The notes beneath the pieces were generated by a model that saw only the letters and a program-made list of their open reading frames with translations, did not search any database and was not told the DNA's origin. The translations under genes and the position numbers were made by a program. Source: Octopus sinensis (lineage: Eukaryota). From it: DNA of 64,000 nucleotides. The stretch spans positions 1 through 64,000 of the forward strand of contig NW_021831989.1 in NCBI RefSeq assembly GCF_006345805.1, in the 5' to 3' direction. Of the stretch, positions 2,701-48,142 are shown piece by piece; the first letter of the stretch is position 1, and every line of letters begins with the position of its first letter.

Positions 2701-2981
2701 TTATCGACTCAAAATATATAGAATAAAGAATAAAAAAGAATAAAAATTTTCATTAAAGATAGTATTAAATTAAATTTTCAAAATAAGTAGAATATACAGA
2801 TTGAAGGAATAAACTTACAAATATTAGAAAATGATGAAATTTCAGATAATTTTATATCCGATGCACAGCGACTTTGTCCTGTCTTTAAGAAAATGCAAGA
2901 ATGTTGTATAAAGAATAAAAATTTTCATTAAAAATAGGATAAAATTCAATTTTCAAAATTTCAAAATAAGTAGAATATGCA

Positions 2982-3992: not shown

Positions 3993-4255
3993 AAGTAGAA
4001 TATGCAGATTGAAGGAATAAACTCGCAAATATTACAAAATGATGAAATTTCAGATAATTTAGCAATTAAAAGAAACTACATCGCGAAGTATCCCTTCTGA
4101 ATCCAATTAAATAAAAAAATAAAGATCGACCAAATAATGTAATACAACAACAAGGTATATCAACCGCGTGTTTACACGTGCATAATTTATTAGGTTTTCT
4201 ATTAATAATTGGGTAACCAAAAATTAAAATAATTTATTAATGAAAACAAACATTA

Positions 4256-5552: not shown

Positions 5553-6222
5553 TAAATCCCAATTCACCCTTTTCACTACTGCTAGAAGATTCAAGGATGG
5601 ACTGGAACTATTCATTGGAGACAAACCTATTCCCTCTTCGCATACCCAGAAGATCCTTGGCGTATTTTTCGACTCCTTAATGACGTTCTCAAGTCACGTG
5701 GAGGAGACTCTAGCTAAAGGTCTTCAGAAGTGGAACGTCTTGAAAGCGCTGTTAAAGAAGAGTCCCTTCCTCCTGAAAGATTGTGTCAGCAAGGTCTACC
5801 AACAAGTGATTTCCCCGACGGTGAGTATGCCTGCTCAGCCTGAAGGCTTGCAATTGCTTGTTCAAAAGCGGAACGTTTGAACTCACTCAGAAGGAAGATT
5901 ATGCTCCACACTGACATCTCAGTTGGCAGCCTTGCTTCCGAGGAGGCAACGCGGAAGAATGATCAGGGTTTCCTACGTTTCTGCAAGGAACTGGGAAATC
6001 CATTCAAGGAAAAGGTGGCCCATGCAGAGGAATTTCGGTCGGTTATAAAGAAATGCACTCCAATTGAGTTCCTCTGCAGAAGGAAGAGAAGGCGTTTCCG
6101 GGATACGGTTGGGTCATCAGAAGATCATGTAAAGAGAGTACGGCTGTTGTTGGAGGCAGGGATTACCAAATTAGTTAGTTCTAACCTATCTTTCTCGGTG
6201 ATCTTGGAGTTAATAAATAAAT
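5553..6222 (+). mobile_element. 3' fragment of an I/Jockey-like LINE with a (TAAA)n tail
   Basis: High nucleotide identity to 24780-25400; KILGVFFDSLMTF motif; ends in taataaataaa. Confidence 0.85.
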
Positions 6223-6618
6223 TAGTAAAGATAATGGAGAAACAGTATCAAACGTGCATTTAAGTAGATTAAAAAAATTTGATTAAAAGTTTGAATTTTT
6301 TTAAATGAATTAATTCTTATTTTTTGTTGACTCCCATTAAATAAATCAAATTTCATTTATTTTAAAAATGTAAAGCCTCAAATGAATGATGTGTGATTTT
6401 TGTAGCACGTAGAAATATAAAAACTAATAAAAAAGAAAATCGAGTAAATTATATTTTCAGATGATTTTTAGATTATATTTATATTTTTGGTAGTTTTTGC
6501 GATGGTGGGTTATCCAACCCGGTGGGCTATAAAACCGGTGAGAAAAAATAATAAAAATAATCCATCAAATAAACGATTAGTATTTCCAAAAAGTGGTTAA
6601 AATGAATAAAACAATCAG

Positions 6619-8342
<1,724 letters not shown>

Positions 8343-10724: not shown

Positions 10725-11600
10725 ACGAGGATTTACGGAGGATATTCTCAATAATAATCGGGTTGTGATCAGAATTTAGGTCGTAAATGACCTTCCAAGA
10801 AGTAACAGGGCCCAGAATTGGAATACACAGCGAGATGTCAGGAGAAGAAATTGCGTCGCCTTTACTTGACGGTGTTCTGGTGTGAGATGAGGGATTGTTG
10901 AGGATAACTAAACCATCAACTTGGTCGAATAGTAGAGATCCTCTTGTGTTGAGAAATTGATTTTTTAGTCATATCGGGCTCTTTGCGTTTATATCACCAC
11001 AAATAATGACATTGCTGAGGGACTGAAAATTATGAATAGAAGTTCAATCCATGAGGACATGACGAGTGAGGATGAGTCTCCTGGTTGATGACCTTGTAGA
11101 GACAGTTATAGCTGTCATTTCAATCACTGGATCGTTGTCAATTAGCGAGTAAGCTTGGAGGTACAGTTAGTGAACGGGATGGATTTTTTAATAAGAGTTA
11201 GTAGGCCACCCGCATTTACAGAGCCCGGTCTGTCCTGAAGGATGTAACCAGGGAAATCTGGCAAGCGATTTTTGGTCGAGAGCTTCGTTTCTTGCACCAA
11301 AGCAATGTCCACATCGTGCTTCTCCAGAAGGAATAAAGTTCAGCACATTTCTGAGGAATCTCATTGATGTTGATCTGCAAGATACGTAATAGGTTCTTCT
11401 TGCTGAGGCCAGGATTTGGTTCAATGTCTCTGGAAAGGAGAAGGGCGAGTTTGATAAGCAAAGAGGTCCTTGGGAGCAATGGCTTCGCGCCTGCTCTGCT
11501 GCCACCGACGTTGCGGAATCGATCCGATCCGACAGGGGAGTAGTTGTGGGTCTTTTCGTAATATAAAACTATCATCTGCCACCGCGAAAAGGTGACCCAT
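10725..11600 (-). mobile_element. APE endonuclease region of a LINE ORF2 preceded by a 2A-like motif
   Basis: LLLSRDIEPNPGL, then ILQININ, ICGDINA, SPDISL and SDHNPI. Confidence 0.82.
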
Positions 11601-16029: not shown

Positions 16030-16468
16030 GAGAGATTCCAGTGTTCTATGGACAATTTCCCTATCGGTATGGTCCTTCAGTAGGGACCACCACTCAATGA
16101 TAATGAGAATGAACTGTTCTCCACATCTCATACTGAAACCAACTTATTTCTATGATTACGAAAACGCAGATTGGAATGCTTTCGCAAATTACGTCGATTC
16201 AAGACTCCAGAACTTCCACCCTGAGAATTTTTCTTCCTTGGACAGGGCAGTGGAAAGCTTCAACAAAACTATCATTGATGCAAGAAATTTGATTATCAGA
16301 ATAGCATGTATAAGAAGTGGGAGCTCAAAATATGATTCAAGAACGAAAAAACTAATCAGAGAAAGAATCAGCCTCAAGAAAAGAAAGTATCGACCCAAAG
16401 GAATCATCGATCGAATCAGGGCTCTAAACATGCTTATTACGAATAATACCAACCAAGTCCAATTTTAA
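16030..16468 (+). mobile_element. I/Jockey-like ORF2 fragment (end of APE plus linker)
   Basis: RDHHSM.. followed by YDYENADWNAF. Confidence 0.6.
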
Positions 16469-16529
16469 TCCGTAATAACTGATTTAATTAGTAAAAGTAG
16501 TCTTTGAAAATGAAATTTTCGAAACTAAT

Positions 16530-17070
16530 ACCGATCTGGGACTTGGAAATGGATTACTAATACCCATACAAAAACCGAACAAACCAAAAGGACCAGTAGA
16601 AAATCTCCGCCCGATAATACTCCTGAACTCGATACGCAAAGTGCTGGCAAACGTCGCACTTAGGCGGATAAAGGGTGTGGCGGATCAATACCTATCACCG
16701 AGTCAAAGTGGGTTCCGAGATGGAAGGTCTACGGCAGACATTGTATGTAGCCACAGATGGCGCTGCGCAACGCACCAAAGATTCAAGAGCACAACGACCG
16801 TGCTGGGAATAGATCTCTCCAGAGCCTTCGACTCAATAAACAGACAGAAACTGATGAATGTGCTTGAGCAAATACTGGATGAATCATCGGTTAGGATAAT
16901 CAGACTACTACTTGCGAACACAAGACTATCTGTGAGGACAGAAGGAGCAACTTCCCGCAGTTTCAAAACAACGACTGGGACACCCCAGGGTGACTCCCTC
17001 TCCCCCCTACTATTCACCATCTACCTTGAATCTGGCAGTTTCTGCGGTCCATGGCGACCGAGATTTGCTA
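16530..17070 (+). mobile_element. RTE-like RT fragment
   Basis: KPKGPVENLRPIILLNSIRK, QSGFRDGRST, DLSRAFDSI and GTPQGDSLSPLLF. Confidence 0.88.
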
Positions 17071-23760: not shown

Positions 23761-25415
23761 CGGTCCTGTCTCTTTATTTATTTATTTATTAACTCCAAGA
23801 TCACCGAGAAAGATAGGTCAGAACTAACTAATTAGGTGATCCCTGCCTCCAACCACAGCCGTACTTTCCTTACATGATCTTCTGATGACCCGACCGTAAT
23901 CCGGGATACTGAACGGCACGGACCACGACCAGAACCGTATTCCACCTTCTTCACACCAGATGATGTTGACAAGGCTATTAAATCCCTACGTCCCACCCGT
24001 TCTTGTGGCCCCGACGGGATTTGTGCTATTCACTTCAAACACCTGGGACCCCGGGCACGGACCGTACTATCAAGACTATATAACGACTCCATCAACTTAC
24101 GTACGATACCTAATATATGGAAAAACTCCCTAATTACGCCAATCCTAAAGCCTGGGAAACCAAAGGATGCCCCCTCTTCATACCGCCCAATCTCAATAAC
24201 TTGTATCTTATCGAAAGTACTGGAAAAGCTCGTATTAATGCGAATCTCTCCTGTCCTACAACTGCCAGAATTCCAGCACGGTTTTAGACCAGACCGTTCC
24301 ACAACGACCCACTTGTGTTCTGTCTCCCAGTTTATCACTGAGGGTTTTAACATGGGAACACACCTACGGACGGCCTTAGTATCTATTGATATACAAAAGG
24401 CTTTTGATTCTGTCCCGAGGAAACTCCTAACGCGGAAGATATTTGATTCGAACTTACATCCGAACATCAAACTGTGGTTGGAAAATTTCTTAACTGGCCG
24501 ACGCGGAGGGTCCGTATCGACAATACTACTTCAAGATCAAGACTACTGCCCAATGGTGTCCCACAAGGCTCCCCTTTATCTCCTCTCCTTTTTAACCTAT
24601 TTCTACATGACCTACCCACTACTAATGACCCAGACATAATGTTCTTATCCTATGCGGACGACCTGATTATCGCTGCAAGAGATAAATCTCCTTCTGTGGC
24701 TGTCGCAATAGTCCAGTCACACCTCAACCGTGTATGTGATTGGCTATCTGCAAACATGTTGTGTGTGTCTGCATCCAAATCCCAATTCACCCTCTTTACT
24801 ACTGACAGAAGATTCAAGAATGGGCTGGAACTATTCATTGGAGACAAACCTATTCCCTCTTCGCGTACCCAGAAGATCCTTGGCGTGGTTTTCGAATCCT
24901 TAATGACGTTCTCAAGTCACGTAGAGGAGGCCCTAGCTAAAGGTCTGCGGAAGTGGAACGTCTTGAAAGCTCTGTTAAAGAAGAGTCCCTTCCCCCTGAA
25001 AGATTGTGTCAGCAAAGTCTACCAACAAGTGATTGCCCCGACGGTTGAGTATGCCTGCTCAGCCTGGAGGTTTGCAATTGCTTGTTCGAAAGCGAAACGT
25101 TCGAACTCACTCAGAAGGAAGATTATGCTCCACACTGACACCTCAGTTGGCAGTCTTGCTTCCGAGGAGGCGACGCAGAAGAATGGAGACCTTTAGCTAG
25201 GGCCTCCTCTACGTGACTTGAGAACGTCATTAAGGATTCGAAAACCATTCAAGTGGACAGGGTTTCCTACGTTTCTGCAAGGAACTGGGAAACCCACTCA
25301 AGGAAAAGGTGGCACATGCAGAGGAATTTCGGTCGGTTATAAAGAAATGCACTCCAATTGAGTTCCTCTGCAGAAGGAAGAGAAGGCTTTTCCGGATTAC
25401 GGTCCTGTCTCTTTA
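23761..25415. mobile_element. I/Jockey-like LINE insertion with 5' inversion, TSD and (TAAA)n tail
   Basis: TSD cggtcctgtctcttta at 23761-23776 and 25400-25415; tail and 3' end on the minus strand at 23777-23904; RT on the plus strand at 23905-25400 (GPDGI, YRPISI, QHGFRP, DIQKAFDSV, GVPQGSPLSP, YADDL). Confidence 0.92.
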
Positions 25416-25512: not shown

Positions 25513-25963
25513 ATGGACAATTCATCACGAAACAAAATGATATCCCAAGACTCCGATAAGGCAGGACAAGAATTTGTAATGATTTTCTACCAAACGATGG
25601 ACAAAAAACGAAACGTGAATTCCAAAATAACCTATATAGCAACTCGCCAACCTGTTTGCAGAGCAATCAAGACTCATATTCGACGGAAACGAATTCTTGG
25701 GAGAAGAAGCCATCACCTTTTTACAAAATATTCCAGTTACGACTCATCGACTGTACTCATATGACTCTCAGCCAATAATAATAAGTAGTGCCCATATTTA
25801 TGTCCCAGATGGCGAACTGTCCTCCGTGTTGGTCACTGTCCAAGGATTACTCATCGTTAACTCGAGTGAAAAGACTTTTTTCAATAATTTCACTCTCCTC
25901 TCCACTAATAATGTTTGGAAAATTACTTCTTGCTGTATGAGAATTTGGAATAACGAAAAATAA
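25513..25963 (+). CDS. NXT: NTF2-related export protein
   Basis: AGQEFVMIFYQTMDKKR, a 25-nt intron, IFDGNEFLG, DSQPI, a 24-nt intron, VLVTVQG and WKITSCCMR. Confidence 0.8.
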
Positions 25964-26305: not shown

Positions 26306-27039
26306 TCATCTCAGAGATTTAAAGAATCCAGACTTGTTTCTTGACGAATGTACAGTGGGCGACCCTCCCGAAAGTCGTTTTCTCTCCTTTTGAGATATTC
26401 CAGTTTGTTGAGAGAACTTGAAGGCAATGTCCTTCTTTACTCGACGGTGAGAGAAGAAGGACAATTGAACGGCCACATCAAACAAAACTTTAATGTTATT
26501 CTGGGTCAGAGCTGAGCACTCTACGTATGAACGGGCTCCGATTTGTTTGGCCAACTCACGACCCTCCTTTTCCGAAATTGTATCTCCCTTTCCTCCCGAG
26601 AGGAGGTCACAATGAGTCCCAACAAGTACAATTGGAATAGTCCGAGAACCAAGTCGGGGACTCCAACAGGACTTGATTTTTTCAAAACTATCTCGATTGA
26701 GCAAGTCGAAGCACAAAAGTATTACATCACACAACTGGATTGTGCTGGAGTGGAAATGCATGCTATCAGGCTACAACTAAATAAGCACATTTACGTTGCC
26801 CGACGTGTCGTAAATCTCCAGCTTCAGCTTATCTCCGAAATACTCAACACACACTGAAATCGAATTTAATCACTACTTGAATAAGTGTCTAGAGAAGTAG
26901 GATTATAATTTTTGTGGAAGTAATGTTTGGCATAGCTCAAAATGAGACAAGTTTTACCGACTCGACTTTCGCCAAACAGTCCAATTCTTACAAAAGGAAT
27001 GTTTCCTGATTGTTCATTGCCTGATTGACCATTCTTCAT
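26306..27039 (-). CDS. Atypical Rho-family GTPase
   Basis: G1 GESRVGKT, G3 DTSGN, G4 VGTHCDL, G5 YVECSAL; introns of 23 and 24 nt. Confidence 0.85.
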
Positions 27040-30872: not shown

Positions 30873-32076
<1,204 letters not shown>

Positions 32077-38799: not shown

Positions 38800-39450
38800 A
38801 TTTTTCTTATTTCCTTCAACAAATTAGAGTTTTGGATAGGATCCCATCTATTGCATCAAACTCCGCTCATGCAAGTCTTTCAGAGGACTGCTGAGCTCTA
38901 GGCAGTTTGATGGAAAATCGTCTGGTCTTGAGCTTGGCGGTTAGACGGTTCCTTTTGTTCATTTGATACCATCTGCGTCAACATGTAGTTTGTAGGAATC
39001 AGTGATGTCTACTGTTAACTCTAATTAGTGTAGGTTCCACGATGTAATTAGAGTCCCATAATCTTTGAACGTCTTTTTTGTCTCGGCCAATCAAAATCCT
39101 ATAAATAGTGCTTTTGTCCCGTGCGAGATTTAAACCTTTATCCCTGCAACATATTTCTAGTTCCTCCAGGTACGGTTCAAGTTTGCTCAGTGTCGGGATT
39201 CCCACAGCGAAACATCCGTAACTAAGATGTCGTCGGCGTAGATGATTAGTCTTCTTGTCAAAAAGGGGGTTTGGTACATCTGACAGGAATAAATTGAAGA
39301 GCAGAGGCCTGAGAACTGATCCCTGGACACCTCTCCTGAGATTCACAGACTTTGATAACAGATTTTTACATCAAGGCACAGACTTTTCTCTGACAGGAAA
39401 CATTCCAGTCATTTTACGTTTTTCTACCCAGCACCAGATCACAATATAGA
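38800..39450 (-). mobile_element. Decayed I/Jockey-like RT fragment
   Basis: GVQGSVLRPLLFNLFLSD, with a frameshifted YADD. Confidence 0.7.
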
Positions 39451-41210: not shown

Positions 41211-41769
41211 TAACACAAAGATATTTCGTACACTATTTGATCTTTTTAAGCATACAATGGATATTTTTGATTATTAGGATTTACTATCAACTCTTTTGAT
41301 AATAGTTTTTTATTTGTAAATTTTCTACACTTTAATGTGTTTCAAACGATTTTACGAAATTATTAGAATTGACACAATAAAGAGAGAAGGAAATAACAAA
41401 AAATTAGCTCAACATGAAAAATATCCAAGGAATTAACAAGAATTAAAAAAGTTTCAACTGCAGTTTTGTAGGATCGCGTTTATCGTGTCAATATTTCGCT
41501 CATGCAAGTCTTGCCCTACTTGTGAGGATTCCAGTGCTTTTTAAAACAATATTTCCGACAGAAGGACGATTTACTCGAAAAAAAACGAATCAAAAAAGCT
41601 CTTTGCTTTTTAAAACAATATTTCCGACATCCTTAGAGTAAATTCTTGGTTGTTCCGCGGAACATTCCCGGCTTTGTTAAAAAATAGCTTTTTCTGTCGT
41701 CTAAAGACCTGCCCTGTAAAATGGATAAGTGTACCCGTCGAAGACATTGTATTCTAATACCGAGTTATT

Positions 41770-44700
41770 AATAATGAGATAAAAATGAAATGAATTTGGA
41801 TAAAAAAGAAACCATACTCGTTAAATCAAAAACTAAAATATTACGAAAGTAAAGAAAGAGCACTAATTGATTCGCTAATTTCATCAATGATCTCAGAGAG
41901 TCCATTAATCTATTCAATCGGAGTTTATTAATGAACCTTTCGATCATTCTGCTCACGAATATGAGGAGGGACACACTCTTCATAGTTAGGTAACCCCGTA
42001 CTCTTCAACACAATTCCCAACTGATTCCTTGTCTTCTTCAACTTATTTTCCAATTTGCTTACTTCCTGATTAATATTAATCTTTCCCTACACATAACGTC
42101 AATTAAAGTAACCTGAACGTGCAGTGACACACTCACACCAGTCCTTATAAAACGGGCCACACAGCCCTGAGGACTGGATTCCACTGCCTTGAATGTTTCA
42201 CATCCAATAAGTGATTGGATATCCTCGCTCATCTCACTATAAAACCGCAACTTGTCTCCATCCCCACACACAGCATAAACTAGCAATTTAGCCAACAGAC
42301 ATACAATTGCCACTCCCGCGCTTAATATCACTAAAACAAGACTTGAGACTCCTAGCCGCACTTACAAACTCCAAAACACAGTCCACCTCAGTAGATACTC
42401 TCTCATTTTCCCATTTCGAATACTGAATCATCACATAAGAGGACTACATCTGAATATTCTGGATATGGAGTGACACATATGCTTGGAGGAGTATTGGGAA
42501 GAGAAGGGAGACGTTGAAAGAGTTCCTCGGCAATGAAAGGCATGAAAGGGGCAATGAGGAGGAGGGCAGTCCTAACACACAAATGCCACCCAACGAATAT
42601 TAGCAAGTCTCGGAGAACTATTATTCCTCAAATGCACTTTAATATTCTCCTGCCAATAGAGAATATACAATAACCAGGTAAACATCGCAGTACTCATTAT
42701 ACCAAAATCTATAGCAAGCATCCGTTGCTTGGGAAAAGTTATATGTGGTGAAGGCAATGTTGCATTCCCGGACTGCTATGGACAATCAATGAAGAATCCA
42801 CATGTCGAATGTTCCTCCAATCTCAGGAGTGAGGTCATTGGAGATGAAAGTGAGAGAAAGTTTGACTGCATTCCATATTTTATTACAGAAGAATCGACAT
42901 CCTTGAATTCGGGAAATATCAAGGTTAATGTCACTCCCTGCATTGAGTGACTACCACTAACCCTGTTGAGTGTATGCACAGAGGGCAAATCGGAGGGCGT
43001 CAGTCCCACACTCCGGAATACCATTCGGGAAACTCATCTTCTGCCCTTCCAAAGCCACGGCAATCTCACTCTCTGCCAAGTTTCCACTTTTCAGTTTATC
43101 GTTCAATTGCTGTAAAGTGGCTCCATAAATAACGTCGATTGGGTCAATGACATTTCCCAAGGACTTACTCATCTTCCTCCCTTGGGCATCCCGGATAATG
43201 GAGTGGAAATAGACATGTGTGAAGGGAAGACAGTCCAGCAGAGTTAGACTCATCATGACCATCCTGGCCACCCAAAAGAAGAGAATGTCACTCCCCGTCT
43301 CCAGAAGTGACGTCGGAAAGTACTTCATGTCCTCAGTCTGCTGTAGTTAATTATTCACAACCTCCTCAGGCCAACCCATCACTGAGAACGGAAACAAAGC
43401 AGATGAAAACCACGTGTCTAGAACGTCCACATCTAAATTAATGTTATTTCTTGCCAACCCCTGGTTAATGTTATTTCTGTGAGTGAGGGATACAGCGAGT
43501 GTGCTTTCGCCAGTGCCTCGCTTTCAGTCCTGCCGACCACCCAACACTCGGATGTGTTAATTCGATAGGCAGGAATTTGATGTCCCCACCACAACTGTCG
43601 AGAAATACACCAATCTCGGCCAGAACTAAGCCAATGTCGCCACGTCTCGTTTAGTTGTGATGGGATTATTACGAGTGACCCATCATCCACTGCCTACCCT
43701 TAGGGAAACCGACTACCTGTATAGCCCTCTGTGACATACTACCACAGTCAACAAACCACTGAGGCAAGAGCAGTGGCTCGATCACGTCATTAGAACGACT
43801 ACAACGAGGAATAGCCATGACATGTGACTGCTCGGAGACATACAAACCCATCTCTTTCAGTTCCAACAACACTTTCTTCCTCGCATGAAAACGAGGTAAT
43901 CCCTACAAATTAATATTTCACTGGCTACTGAAAAAGCTCCACATTCTCCACACATCTTGCCCTCTTTGTCAATCACAGTAAGAAGGGGCAGTCCATGTCG
44001 TTCGCCCACTAAAAAGTCCTTTTCGTCGTGGCCAGGCGTTATTTTAACACAGCCAGTCCCGAACTCATGTCGACGAAGGAATCACCAATCACGGGGATTC
44101 TTCTGTCCACGAGTCTGTTCACCACATACTTCCCCACCAAATGAGCATATCGACTATCATCCGGGTGGACGGCCACTGCAGTATCCCCCAGCATTGTCTC
44201 AGGCCTGGTGGTCGCCACAGTCAAAGTCTCGTCAGAATTCTCCACGGGGTATTTAAAGAGGTAGATCACTCCAAACGGCACTTTTGCCTCATAGCCCGGC
44301 ACAGTCAAATATGTCTTGCCAGACAATTCCAGTTTATCCACTTCCACGTCAGAAATGGCGGATCCGAGGGCACAAGACCAATTCACCAGTCTGCTCTTCC
44401 GGTAGATGAGTCCCATGTCATACAACCTCACAAACGCCTCCACAACAGCACGGGATGATTTCTACATTTAATAATCACTAAACTTGACTCATAGTGAAAC
44501 ACTCCCTGTCCCAGTCTACTGATATTCCTGCCTTCTTGAATTGACTATAAATAGTGTTCCCCTTCTCTTCTTTCCATTTCCACACGCGGGACAGGAATTG
44601 ATCCCTTCCCAGGTCATGTTTGGTCAGGCCTTCTTCTCGTTGGATTTTACGCTCCAGAAGTGACTGGGTTGCAATCCCTGCGTGGTCACAGCCCGGGACC

Positions 44701-45089
44701 CAGAGAGTAGCCCGTCCCCTCATTCTATTCCACCGAACAATTGCATCTTCGATGGAGACTGTCAGCATATGCCCCAAGTGGAGAGAGCCAGTCACGTTGG
44801 GCGGGGGGATTACAATCACAAACTTGTCTCCGTCATTCTATTTATGGATAGGGAGAGTTGTACGTTGTATTCGGGTTTGAAATATCCTTCTTTCACCCAC
44901 CAGTCGTACCAGCCGGCTTCAACGTATTGGGGGGAGTAGGAATCAGGTAGAGGACAAGCAGTGTCTAAATGTTGAGAGATAATTATAACTCTTTTTTCCT
45001 GCTTCAAATAGTTCGGAGGTTTGTGATTTGTTGTTCTATTTATAACTTAAATGTTTTTATACGTTTGTTGTGTTTAATTCCATATCCAT
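41770..45089 (-). CDS. VARS: Valyl-tRNA synthetase, multi-exon; 3' end approximate
   Basis: [13 protein letters not shown] (HIGH), [38 protein letters not shown] and GTDALRF. Confidence 0.95.
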
Positions 45090-47206: not shown

Positions 47207-48142
47207 TCATGCATTGCTGGCTGTGCTTTGGTGACGGACAAGCTTAGTCCACTGATATGTCAGATCGTTGTGGAAATTCATATTCCTGAATAAAATACGG
47301 AATAGTTGTCGGAGATAAAAGTAGTCGGGGGCCTCGTCAAATCGAAGAGAACGACAGTAATTGAGATAAATCACAAATTCGTTGGGAAACCCCCGACAGA
47401 GTGACTCCACTGCCGTCGATATCTTCTTCTCTGATATCCTCTCATACTTCTGTCGCCGATTCCCAGCTCTGAGGCCTTGCCAAGGCAGGTTTCCTCTGTT
47501 GAGGTACATGAGGACGTACCCTAGGGACTCCAAATCATCCCTCCGACTCTGTTCCACCCCCAAATGAGCATTAATACTGGCATATCGAGCAGTCCCCGTC
47601 AGACTCTTGTTCTCTCTGTAGGGAATGTGGACACCCGTGGACACACTCATATACTTCTTGGCCAGACCAAAGTCGATTATGAACACTTTGTTCGAATACT
47701 TCCCCAAACCCATCAAAAAGTTGTCGGGTTTTATGTCCCTGTGAATAAAACAACGGGAATGGACAAATTGAAGTCTCTCCAACATTTGGTCAGCCAACAT
47801 CAACACACTTTTCAGTTCGAGTCTTCGATTACAGACATTAAATAATTCTTCTATTGACTGTCCCAGCAGTTCCATCACCATTATATTGTATCCGTTATGC
47901 TGGAAATATCCGCTTATTGACGGGATTCCGTGGTCTTTTTGGAGGTGTTGATAAACTTTACTCTCATATGCCAATTGCGTGTGCTCAGAACGAGAATTCT
48001 CGACTTTTACGGCCACTTCTTCGCCGTTAATAATACTCACTGCCGAATATATTTTTCCGAATGACCCACTTCCAATTTGACGGATCAGTCGGTAATAGTT
48101 TCCAACTACCACGTTTGCTAGGTTGTCTTCAATTTCTGACAT
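47207..48142 (-). CDS. CSNK1A1: Casein kinase I alpha, single exon
   Basis: 311-aa ORF with [36 protein letters not shown] and SRRDDLES. Confidence 0.95.

What the first reader, a model, noticed from the sequence alone, without database searches (positions are those of the whole stretch)
23761..25415. Twin-priming geometry in a non-L1 LINE
Seen: 16-bp TSDs bracket the insertion. The (TAAA)n tail and last ~128 bp lie on the minus strand next to the left TSD, while 1.5 kb of RT lies on the plus strand. The 13-mer ccggattacggtc is present in both pieces, and its last 5 nt (cggtc) equal the first 5 nt of the TSD. The tail repeat also matches the ttta end of the TSD. The copy at 5553-6222 shows the unrearranged order. 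Known: this is the signature of twin priming described for mammalian L1. Inference: an invertebrate I/Jockey-like element uses the same mechanism.
Basis: partly seen in the sequence, partly recalled or inferred. Interest (0 to 1): 0.7.

Follow-up and report, generated by a model that had tools for sequence, protein, structure and literature searches.

The report
Half-inverted jumping-gene copy in octopus
One copy of an octopus LINE retrotransposon (not an L1) has its front 1.5 kb flipped relative to its tail inside a single 16-bp target duplication; this is the pattern "twin priming" gives in mammalian L1, so the mechanism is probably not limited to L1.

Summary
The 16-mer CGGTCCTGTCTCTTTA occurs only at 23761-23776 and 25400-25415. 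On the minus strand, next to the left copy, lie an AA(TAAA)3 tail and the last 114 nt of a LINE. A 1.5-kb RT-coding piece of the same element lies on the plus strand and ends at the right copy. The 13-mer CCGGATTACGGTC is in both pieces, and its last 5 nt equal the first 5 nt of the TSD. Un-inverting the pieces restores collinearity with the copy at 5554-6231.

The contig is from Octopus sinensis. The RT is far from L1 ORF2p. Its relatives are APE+RT proteins without RNase H, so it falls in the CR1/Jockey/I supergroup and is probably CR1-like. "I/Jockey-like" is not established.

Every sequence-level hallmark of twin priming that I could test is met. The 11-16 bp TSD, 13-nt cDNA overlap and 5-nt microhomology fall within published L1 distributions. 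I rate twin priming at about 0.75.

It is probably a separate repair-type event.

I could obtain no empty site, second genome or family consensus. This is one locus: a new member of a known kind, of moderate interest.

The parts
23761..23776 (+). Left copy of the target-site duplication, CGGTCCTGTCTCTTTA. On the plus strand its 3' end (..CTTTA) is the inferred primer for tail-primed cDNA synthesis.
   Evidence: The 16-mer occurs only here and at 25400. P=1.2e-10 per position.
23777..23790 (-). 3' tail of the element, AA(TAAA)3 on the minus strand. It continues in register into the TTTA that ends the left TSD copy, giving 4 nt of microhomology.
   Evidence: Direct reading. Copy 1 ends AATAAATAAATT at 6218-6229.
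23791..23904 (-). Non-inverted, tail-primed segment: the last 114 nt of the element. It includes one copy of the 13-mer at 23892-23904.
   Evidence: 91% identity to the reverse complement of copy 1, 6231-6094. Collinear after un-inverting.
23892..23904 (-). 13-nt overlap, copy A: CCGGATTACGGTC on the minus strand. This stretch of the template is represented in both cDNAs.
   Evidence: Both copies carry the same 3 differences from copy 1 (CCGGGATACGGTT), so both come from the same source variant.
23905..25404 (+). Inverted, internally primed segment: 1.5 kb of ORF2, 5'-truncated in the EN-RT linker. RVT_1 covers about 24160-24890. There is one frameshift near 24500. The exact 5' end is uncertain within 23905 to about 23945.
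   Evidence: RVT_1 E=1.8e-38. Homology to relatives starts at query residues 14-17. Reading frames.
25392..25404 (+). 13-nt overlap, copy B. Its last 5 nt, CGGTC (25400-25404), are microhomology between the element RNA and the target overhang. This is the inferred internal priming site.
   Evidence: P of 5 nt by chance is 3.7e-4. The RNA carries CGGTC natively, as shown by copy A.
25400..25415 (+). Right copy of the TSD. The true duplicated length is 11-16 bp because of the 5-nt microhomology.
25186..25257 (+). Secondary 72-bp insert. It replaces 2 nt (AT in copy 1) and consists of G, then a perfect 61-nt inverted copy (25187-25247) of 24886-24946, then a 10-nt filler TTCAAGTGGA. It breaks the ORF.
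   Evidence: AAGTGGA also occurs at 24951-24957, 4 nt beyond the donor.
24886..24946 (+). Donor segment of the 61-nt inverted duplication.
   Evidence: 61/61 complementary, with 240 nt between the arms.
5554..6231 (+). Ordinary 5'-truncated copy of the same family in unrearranged order. Used as the reference for the 3' 680 nt.
   Evidence: 92.6% identity to the un-inverted copy 2.

Best explanation
This is a single retrotransposition event of a CR1/Jockey-supergroup LINE in the Octopus sinensis germ line, in which reverse transcription was primed from both ends of a staggered target break (twin priming).

Shown by the sequence. The two nicks lie 16 nt apart: plus strand ...TCTTTA^GCTT and minus strand ...GGACCG^AGCC. 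Each side of the break therefore carries a 3' overhang.

Inferred steps.
1. The plus-strand overhang (..CTTTA-3') paired with the (UAAA)n tail of the RNA. It primed a cDNA that copied the tail plus only 114 nt and stopped at the CCGG of the 13-mer.
2. The minus-strand overhang (..CAGGACCG-3') paired with an internal CGGUC. It primed a second cDNA that ran 1.5 kb towards the 5' end of the same RNA.
3. The two cDNA 3' ends were joined at 23904/23905 and the second strands were filled in.
4. The result has the front of the element inverted relative to its tail, with a 13-nt stretch of template copied into both cDNAs, all inside one TSD.

The 72-bp insert carrying a 61-nt inverted copy of nearby sequence is most simply a separate repair-mediated capture of proximal DNA. 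It could also be a template switch during second-strand synthesis.
For: - One 16-bp TSD brackets both pieces exactly.
- The tail abuts one TSD copy, and the tail-less piece abuts the other TSD copy with its 3'-most element base.
- The two pieces are contiguous in element coordinates with a 13-nt overlap. In human L1 5' inversions the overlap has a median of 12 bp with quartiles 4-17 (PMC12016303).
- Both copies of the 13-mer share the same 3 differences from copy 1, as expected from one RNA.
- The 5' junction has 5 nt of GC-rich microhomology, P=3.7e-4. About 95% of 5'-inverted L1s have such microhomology and about 70% have 2-5 bp (PMC2912911).
- A tail-less plus-strand LINE piece cannot arise by ordinary TPRT.
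- The 16-bp TSD, the 13-mer and the 61-nt repeat add up to 90 bp of duplicated sequence with 0 differences, and the ORF has one frameshift. Both indicate a young, single event.
Against: - This is one locus only.
- I could retrieve no empty-site allele or orthologous locus.
- I found no further copies of the family, so there is no consensus.
- The 5' end of the inverted piece and any microhomology at the internal junction therefore cannot be defined.
- The 72-bp templated insert shows that DNA-level rearrangement has acted on this copy. That raises the prior for a post-integration inversion.
- Priming itself cannot be seen in a sequence.
Confidence: 0.75

Rival explanations
1. Post-integration inversion. 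An ordinary 5'-truncated minus-strand insertion was later inverted from the 13-mer to the element/TSD boundary. One break was staggered by 13 nt, which gives the inverted 13-mer at both ends. The other break was closed by microhomology-mediated joining at CGGTC.
For: It reproduces the observed order and the inverted 13-mer pair. The locus carries another DNA-level rearrangement, the 72-bp templated insert. Such repair events are common (PMC2671141).
Against: The second breakpoint must fall within 0-5 bp of the insertion boundary, out of about 1.6 kb of possible positions, with no loss of TSD bases. Twin priming predicts that coincidence, whereas a random inversion does not. The overlap length and the microhomology match L1 twin-priming statistics.
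Confidence: 0.1
2. Two-template variant ('dual priming' or template switching). Two RNA molecules of the same subfamily were used, one at each overhang, or the RT switched templates. A single RNA was not primed twice.
For: A 13-nt overlap is easier to obtain from two templates. Meyer et al. proposed dual priming for similar L1 structures (PMC2837659).
Against: The break coordinates of the two pieces coincide to within 13 nt, which two independent RNAs do not predict. Both 13-mers carry the same variants. L1 events attributed to a single RNA show the same overlaps.
Confidence: 0.08
3. Assembly artefact in the PacBio-based contig, such as a chimeric or mis-joined repeat.
For: The assembly is long-read and Hi-C based, and I could inspect no reads.
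Against: A mis-join would not produce a perfect 16-bp TSD at the outer edges. It would also not produce a base-exact 13-nt overlap and microhomologies at both ends.
Confidence: 0.04
4. Two independent insertions of the same family next to each other, followed by a deletion.
For: LINE fragments are dense in this window.
Against: Neither piece has its own TSD. The plus piece lacks its 3' end and tail exactly up to the TSD. The pieces abut in element coordinates.
Confidence: 0.03

Closest known systems
Twin priming / 5'-inverted insertions of mammalian L1 (Ostertag & Kazazian 2001; statistics in PMC2912911 and PMC12016303)
   Same: One TSD surrounds two opposite-oriented segments of one element. 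The tail lies at one TSD. The internal priming site lies at the other TSD with 2-5 nt of microhomology. The cDNAs overlap by about 12 nt. The TSD is 10-20 bp.
   Different: The element is not L1: it has a (TAAA)n microsatellite tail instead of poly(A), a CR1/Jockey-supergroup RT, and a mollusc host. This is a single case rather than the roughly 20-30% of insertions seen for L1.
L1 'poly(T)' loci, interpreted as twin priming with very short non-inverted portions (Meyer et al. 2010, PMC2837659)
   Same: The tail-primed cDNA is very short (114 nt plus tail here) and the internally primed cDNA is long.
   Different: Here the non-inverted piece clearly leaves the tail and overlaps the inverted piece, so both pieces can be assigned without ambiguity.
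The single 5'-inverted Nimb-2_DR insert (zebrafish I-clade LINE) recovered in chicken DT40 cells (Yamaguchi et al. 2014, PMC4245944)
   Same: A non-L1 LINE with long TSDs (peak about 12 bp) gave a 5' inversion. ZfL2-1, with 5-bp TSDs, gave none. This fits the idea that a long 3' overhang is what matters.
   Different: That case was an engineered element in a heterologous cell line. This one is a natural germ-line copy in a mollusc, in a family without RNase H.
[quoted passage not shown] 2009, PMC2671141). This applies to the 72-bp insert only.
   Same: The donor is less than 5 kb away (240 bp here). The copy is short. There is filler (11 nt here) and a small deletion (2 nt here) at the acceptor.
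   Different: The copy here is inverted and lies inside a young LINE copy. I could not determine whether it arose during or after integration.

Membership tests
Twin-primed (5'-inverted) LINE insertion | Two segments of the same element in opposite orientation inside one pair of TSDs | tested here: met
   The 16-mer occurs only at the two outer edges.
Twin-primed (5'-inverted) LINE insertion | The tail-bearing segment abuts one TSD through its tail. The other segment abuts the other TSD with its 3'-most element base and has no tail. | tested here: met
   23776/23777 is TSD/(TTTA)n, and 25399-25404/25405 is the element/TSD boundary.
Twin-primed (5'-inverted) LINE insertion | The end of the non-inverted cDNA and the start of the inverted cDNA coincide in element coordinates, with a small gap or overlap | tested here: met
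   A 13-nt overlap. For L1 the median is 12 bp.
Twin-primed (5'-inverted) LINE insertion | Microhomology between the target overhang and the internal priming site | tested here: met
   5 nt, CGGTC, P=3.7e-4. The L1 norm is 2-5 bp.
Twin-primed (5'-inverted) LINE insertion | Long TSD (10-20 bp), meaning a long 3' overhang | tested here: met
   11-16 bp. The criterion comes from PMC4245944.
Twin-primed (5'-inverted) LINE insertion | Microhomology at the internal inversion junction | tested here: inconclusive
   No second copy covers the 5' end of the plus piece, and homology to relatives starts only at about 23944. There is no match beyond CCGG on the tail side.
Twin-primed (5'-inverted) LINE insertion | The empty site carries one copy of the TSD | not testable with these tools
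   No other octopus locus could be retrieved.
L1 clade | Poly(A) tail and an RT that groups with L1 ORF2p | tested here: not met
   The tail is AA(TAAA)3. The RT scores 57 bits to L1 ORF2p, 53 bits to R2 and 328 bits to its nearest relatives.
I clade | RNase H domain downstream of the RT | tested here: not met
   Pfam finds only RVT_1 in the element and nothing in its C-terminal 131 aa. Relatives with about 300-aa C-terminal regions have no RNase H.
Jockey clade | Poly(A) 3' end; RT phylogeny | tested here: not met
   The tail is a tetranucleotide repeat. The 'jockey' names on hits are automatic labels. Phylogeny was not run because no reference set was available.
CR1/L2-like LINEs | APE+RT ORF2, no RNase H, microsatellite-like 3' tail; RT phylogeny | tested here: inconclusive
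   The architecture of relatives fits (P0017: PF03372/PF14529 plus RVT_1), and so does the tail. CR1 is the only such superfamily among the recently active O. vulgaris LINE superfamilies. No proper phylogeny was done.

The most novel reading that the evidence does not exclude
Twin priming is a general outcome for any LINE whose endonuclease leaves a long (over 10 nt) staggered break, whatever its clade, tail type or host. On this reading the octopus family produces 5'-inverted copies routinely. The 61-nt snap-back copy inside the inverted piece would then be a footprint of template switching during second-strand synthesis of the same event, a step of LINE integration that is still poorly understood.
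Probability: 0.3. Interest if true: 0.55.

Novelty: new member of a known kind. Interest (0 to 1): 0.4.

Why it matters
In the open literature I could search, 5' inversion is treated as a property of mammalian L1. All of the 57 papers listed for 'twin priming' and 'twin-priming', out of 106 and 22 that hold the terms, concern L1 or mammalian genomes. In the one comparative experiment, 5' inversions occurred only with human L1 in human cells, apart from a single Nimb-2_DR insert, and the authors concluded that 5' inversion depends on the LINE and the host.

A natural 5'-inverted copy of a CR1/Jockey-type LINE in a cephalopod, with an L1-like long TSD, overlap and microhomology, fits the view that overhang length matters more than L1-specific biochemistry. 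It also gives a simple genome-wide test: compare inversion frequency with TSD length across the many active octopus LINE families.

Practically, such copies can be annotated as two separate opposite-strand fragments, which would inflate insertion counts.

Tried and rejected
1. Empty site or orthologue. The flanking Ras-like exon (26306-26761) is on record only on the source contig. The ORF just right of the insertion is not on record. A 30-mer from the left flank gave no match in metagenome contigs.

2. Family consensus. The best protein relatives are only 46% identical. A conserved 32-mer of the element gave no match in metagenome contigs. The window holds only two copies.

3. A second candidate 5'-inverted LINE in the window: EN on the minus strand at 10747-11333 and linker plus RT on the plus strand at 16076-17030, with abutting protein coordinates. 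I rejected it. The overlapping SDH-motif regions differ in sequence, the minus piece continues past the supposed break in the P0069 alignment, and there is no nucleotide overlap.

4. RNA structure at the internal priming site. The fold of the 3' 202 nt is no better than shuffles (z=-1.4), so I drew no conclusion.

5. Microhomology-based reconstruction of the 72-bp insert, using snap-back and strand-switch models. No clean microhomology appears at the switch points. The only observations are that AAGTGGA recurs 4 nt beyond the donor and that CCATTCAAG matches copy 1 at 6000.

6. TSD of copy 1. I found none of 8 nt or longer, so the family's typical TSD length is unknown.

7. Rfam found nothing in the window.

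Full report
WHAT IS THERE

The 16-mer CGGTCCTGTCTCTTTA occurs exactly twice in the window, at 23761-23776 and 25400-25415. The match does not extend on either side. From base composition, the chance of this 16-mer at a given position is 1.2e-10. The whole 64 kb contains only nine distinct exact direct-repeat pairs of 16 nt or more at 300-6000 bp spacing.

Between the two copies lie two pieces of one LINE family.
- Directly after the left copy comes TTTATTTATTTATT (23777-23790), which reads AA(TAAA)3 on the minus strand. It is followed by 114 nt (23791-23904) that match the reverse complement of the 3' end of the copy at 5554-6231 (91%).
- From about 23905 to 25404 the plus strand carries 1.5 kb of ORF2. 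Pfam RVT_1 matches with E=1.8e-38. The reading frame is open except for one frameshift near 24500.
- The 13-mer CCGGATTACGGTC is present at 25392 (+) and 23892 (-) and nowhere else.
- When the plus piece up to 25404 is joined to the reverse complement of 23777-23891, using one copy of the 13-mer, the result aligns collinearly with copy 1. Identity is 92.6% and there is no gap at the join.

HOST AND ELEMENT

Two exact-ORF look-ups place the window at the start of contig VCDQ01006019.1 of GCA_006345805.1. That assembly is the PacBio plus Hi-C assembly of Octopus sinensis.

The nearest proteins in the large collection are only 46% identical. They are unnamed, or carry automatic 'jockey' labels. 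Where they are long enough, they are APE endonuclease (PF03372/PF14529) plus RVT_1, and they have no RNase H even with about 300 residues after the RT.

Against solved structures, the RT scores 57 bits to human L1 ORF2p and 53 bits to R2, so it is not an L1. The element itself has about 185 codons between the end of RVT_1 and the tail. No Pfam domain is found there.

The recently active LINE superfamilies reported for O. vulgaris are RTE, Dong-R4, CR1, L1-Tx1, Hero and R2. By elimination this family is probably CR1-like.

GEOMETRY AND MECHANISM

Viewed on the window's minus strand, the order is: TSD, inverted 1.5-kb 5' segment, internal junction, 114-nt 3' segment, tail, TSD. This is the canonical order of a 5'-inverted L1 (descriptions).

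The empty site, reconstructed by joining the flanks, reads ...GGCT CGGTCCTGTCTCTTTA GCTT.... The two nicks are 16 nt apart and leave two 3' overhangs.
- The plus-strand overhang ends ..CTTTA-3' and can pair with the (UAAA)n tail. This gives 4 nt of microhomology, in register.
- The minus-strand overhang ends ..CAGGACCG-3' and can pair with the CGGUC inside the RNA's CCGGAUUACGGUC. This gives 5 nt, four of them G/C, with a chance probability of 3.7e-4.
- That the RNA itself carried CGGUC is shown by the tail-side piece, which contains the full 13-mer followed by the next element bases.
- Both 13-mers share the same three differences from copy 1 (CCGGGATACGGTT), as expected if both cDNAs copied one RNA.

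The tail-primed cDNA stopped after 114 nt. The internally primed cDNA ran 1.5 kb. The 13 nt between the stop and the priming site were copied twice.

COMPARISON WITH L1

- In human L1, 46% of 5'-inverted insertions have the two break coordinates within 20 bp of each other, and 41% of those overlap. The median overlap is 12 bp with quartiles 4-17, similar to the TSD length (PMC12016303).
- About 95% of 5'-inverted L1s have microhomology at the 5' junction, and about 70% have 2-5 bp (PMC2912911).
- L1 5' inversions go with TSDs of 10-20 bp (PMC4245944).

The octopus copy has a 13-nt overlap, 5-nt microhomology and an 11-16 bp TSD, so it sits in the middle of each of these distributions.

In the same experimental study, ZfL2-1 (5-bp TSDs) never gave 5' inversions. 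Only one Nimb-2_DR insert (TSD peak about 12 bp) did. The present case fits the overhang-length idea and extends it to a natural copy in a mollusc.

All of the 57 papers listed by the two searches for 'twin priming' and 'twin-priming' (106 and 22 papers hold the terms) deal with L1 or mammalian genomes. I found no report of a genomic 5'-inverted non-L1 LINE. The searched library covers open-access papers and preprints only.

RIVALS

A later inversion of an ordinary minus-strand copy, with one 13-nt staggered break, would give the same order. It requires the other break to coincide with the insertion boundary within 0-5 bp. Twin priming predicts that coincidence.

Two RNAs ('dual priming') do not predict coinciding break coordinates.

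Two independent insertions are excluded because neither piece has its own TSD and the plus piece has no tail.

A mis-assembly would not create matching TSDs and base-exact overlaps.

I put twin priming at about 0.75, later inversion at 0.10, a two-template variant at 0.08, an artefact at 0.04 and two insertions at 0.03.

THE SECOND REARRANGEMENT

Relative to copy 1, the plus piece has a 72-bp insert at 25186-25257 that replaces 2 nt. It consists of G, then a perfect 61-nt inverted copy (25187-25247) of 24886-24946 lying 240 nt upstream, then TTCAAGTGGA. It introduces a stop codon and a frameshift into an otherwise continuous ORF. It is therefore unlikely to have been carried by an autonomous source element.

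Its features are those of repair-mediated capture of proximal DNA (PMC2671141): a nearby donor, a short copy, filler and a small deletion. A snap-back during second-strand synthesis of the same integration event remains possible. I could not find convincing microhomologies for either model.

The 61 nt, the 16-bp TSD and the 13-mer together give 90 bp of duplicated sequence with no differences. The insertion and the 72-bp event are therefore both young.

LIMITS

No second genome, empty site, reads or further family members could be reached with the tools. As a result, the 5' end of the inverted piece is uncertain within 23905 to about 23945, because homology to relatives starts at residues 14-17. 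Microhomology at the internal junction and the family's usual TSD length also remain open. A crude survey of the other LINE fragments in the window found no second inverted copy. One candidate was examined and rejected.

VERDICT

The twin-priming reading is the best-supported explanation. The clade label needs correcting. This is a new member of a known kind, and the interest is moderate.

Noticed in passing
window 25186-25257 (donor 24886-24946): A perfect 61-nt inverted duplication sits inside a 72-bp insert in the plus-strand LINE piece and is absent from the copy at 5554-6231. It has 11 nt of filler and replaces 2 nt. It looks like repair-mediated capture of proximal DNA or a snap-back template switch.
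   Followed up: partly
window 5877-6229, and copy 2 at 25258-25404 plus the reverse complement of 23777-23891: In this LINE family the ORF2 frame stays open to the very 3' end: 128 codons without a stop in copy 1. The first in-frame stop of copy 2 lies inside the (TAAA)n tail, so there is essentially no 3' UTR. The region after the RT is about 100 aa shorter than in the nearest relatives.
   Followed up: partly
window 11216-11575 (-): Another LINE fragment has a 2A-like peptide motif (LLLSRDIEPNPG-L) immediately upstream of the start of its APE endonuclease domain. The final Pro of the canonical NPGP is Leu here.
   Followed up: no
window 38864-38879 and 41497-41512: A second exact 16-mer direct repeat (CGCTCATGCAAGTCTT), 2.6 kb apart, brackets a minus-strand RT fragment (39107-39370). 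It may be the TSD of another LINE insertion of similar stagger length.
   Followed up: partly
window 10747-11333 (-) and 16076-17030 (+): An EN-coding fragment and a linker-plus-RT fragment of related LINEs lie in opposite orientation with abutting protein coordinates, which mimics a 5' inversion. Their overlapping regions differ in sequence, so they are separate insertions.
   Followed up: yes
window 2797-2843 and 4005-4051: Two exact repeats of 16 nt or more share the same 1208-bp offset (2797/4005 and 2828/4036). This indicates a longer direct repeat in the first 5 kb. Its nature was not examined.
   Followed up: no
window 6619-7734 (-), 26306-26761 (-), 31525-32076 (+), 42957-44819 (-), 47207-48142 (-): Host exons are recognisable by eye or by precomputed Pfam: aldehyde dehydrogenase-like, Ras-family GTPase (PF00071), a divergent actin, valyl-tRNA synthetase-like, and a casein-kinase-I-like kinase as a single 311-aa ORF. 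The LINE insertion lies about 100 bp upstream of an unassigned ORF (25513-25764) that has no Pfam hit.
   Followed up: partly
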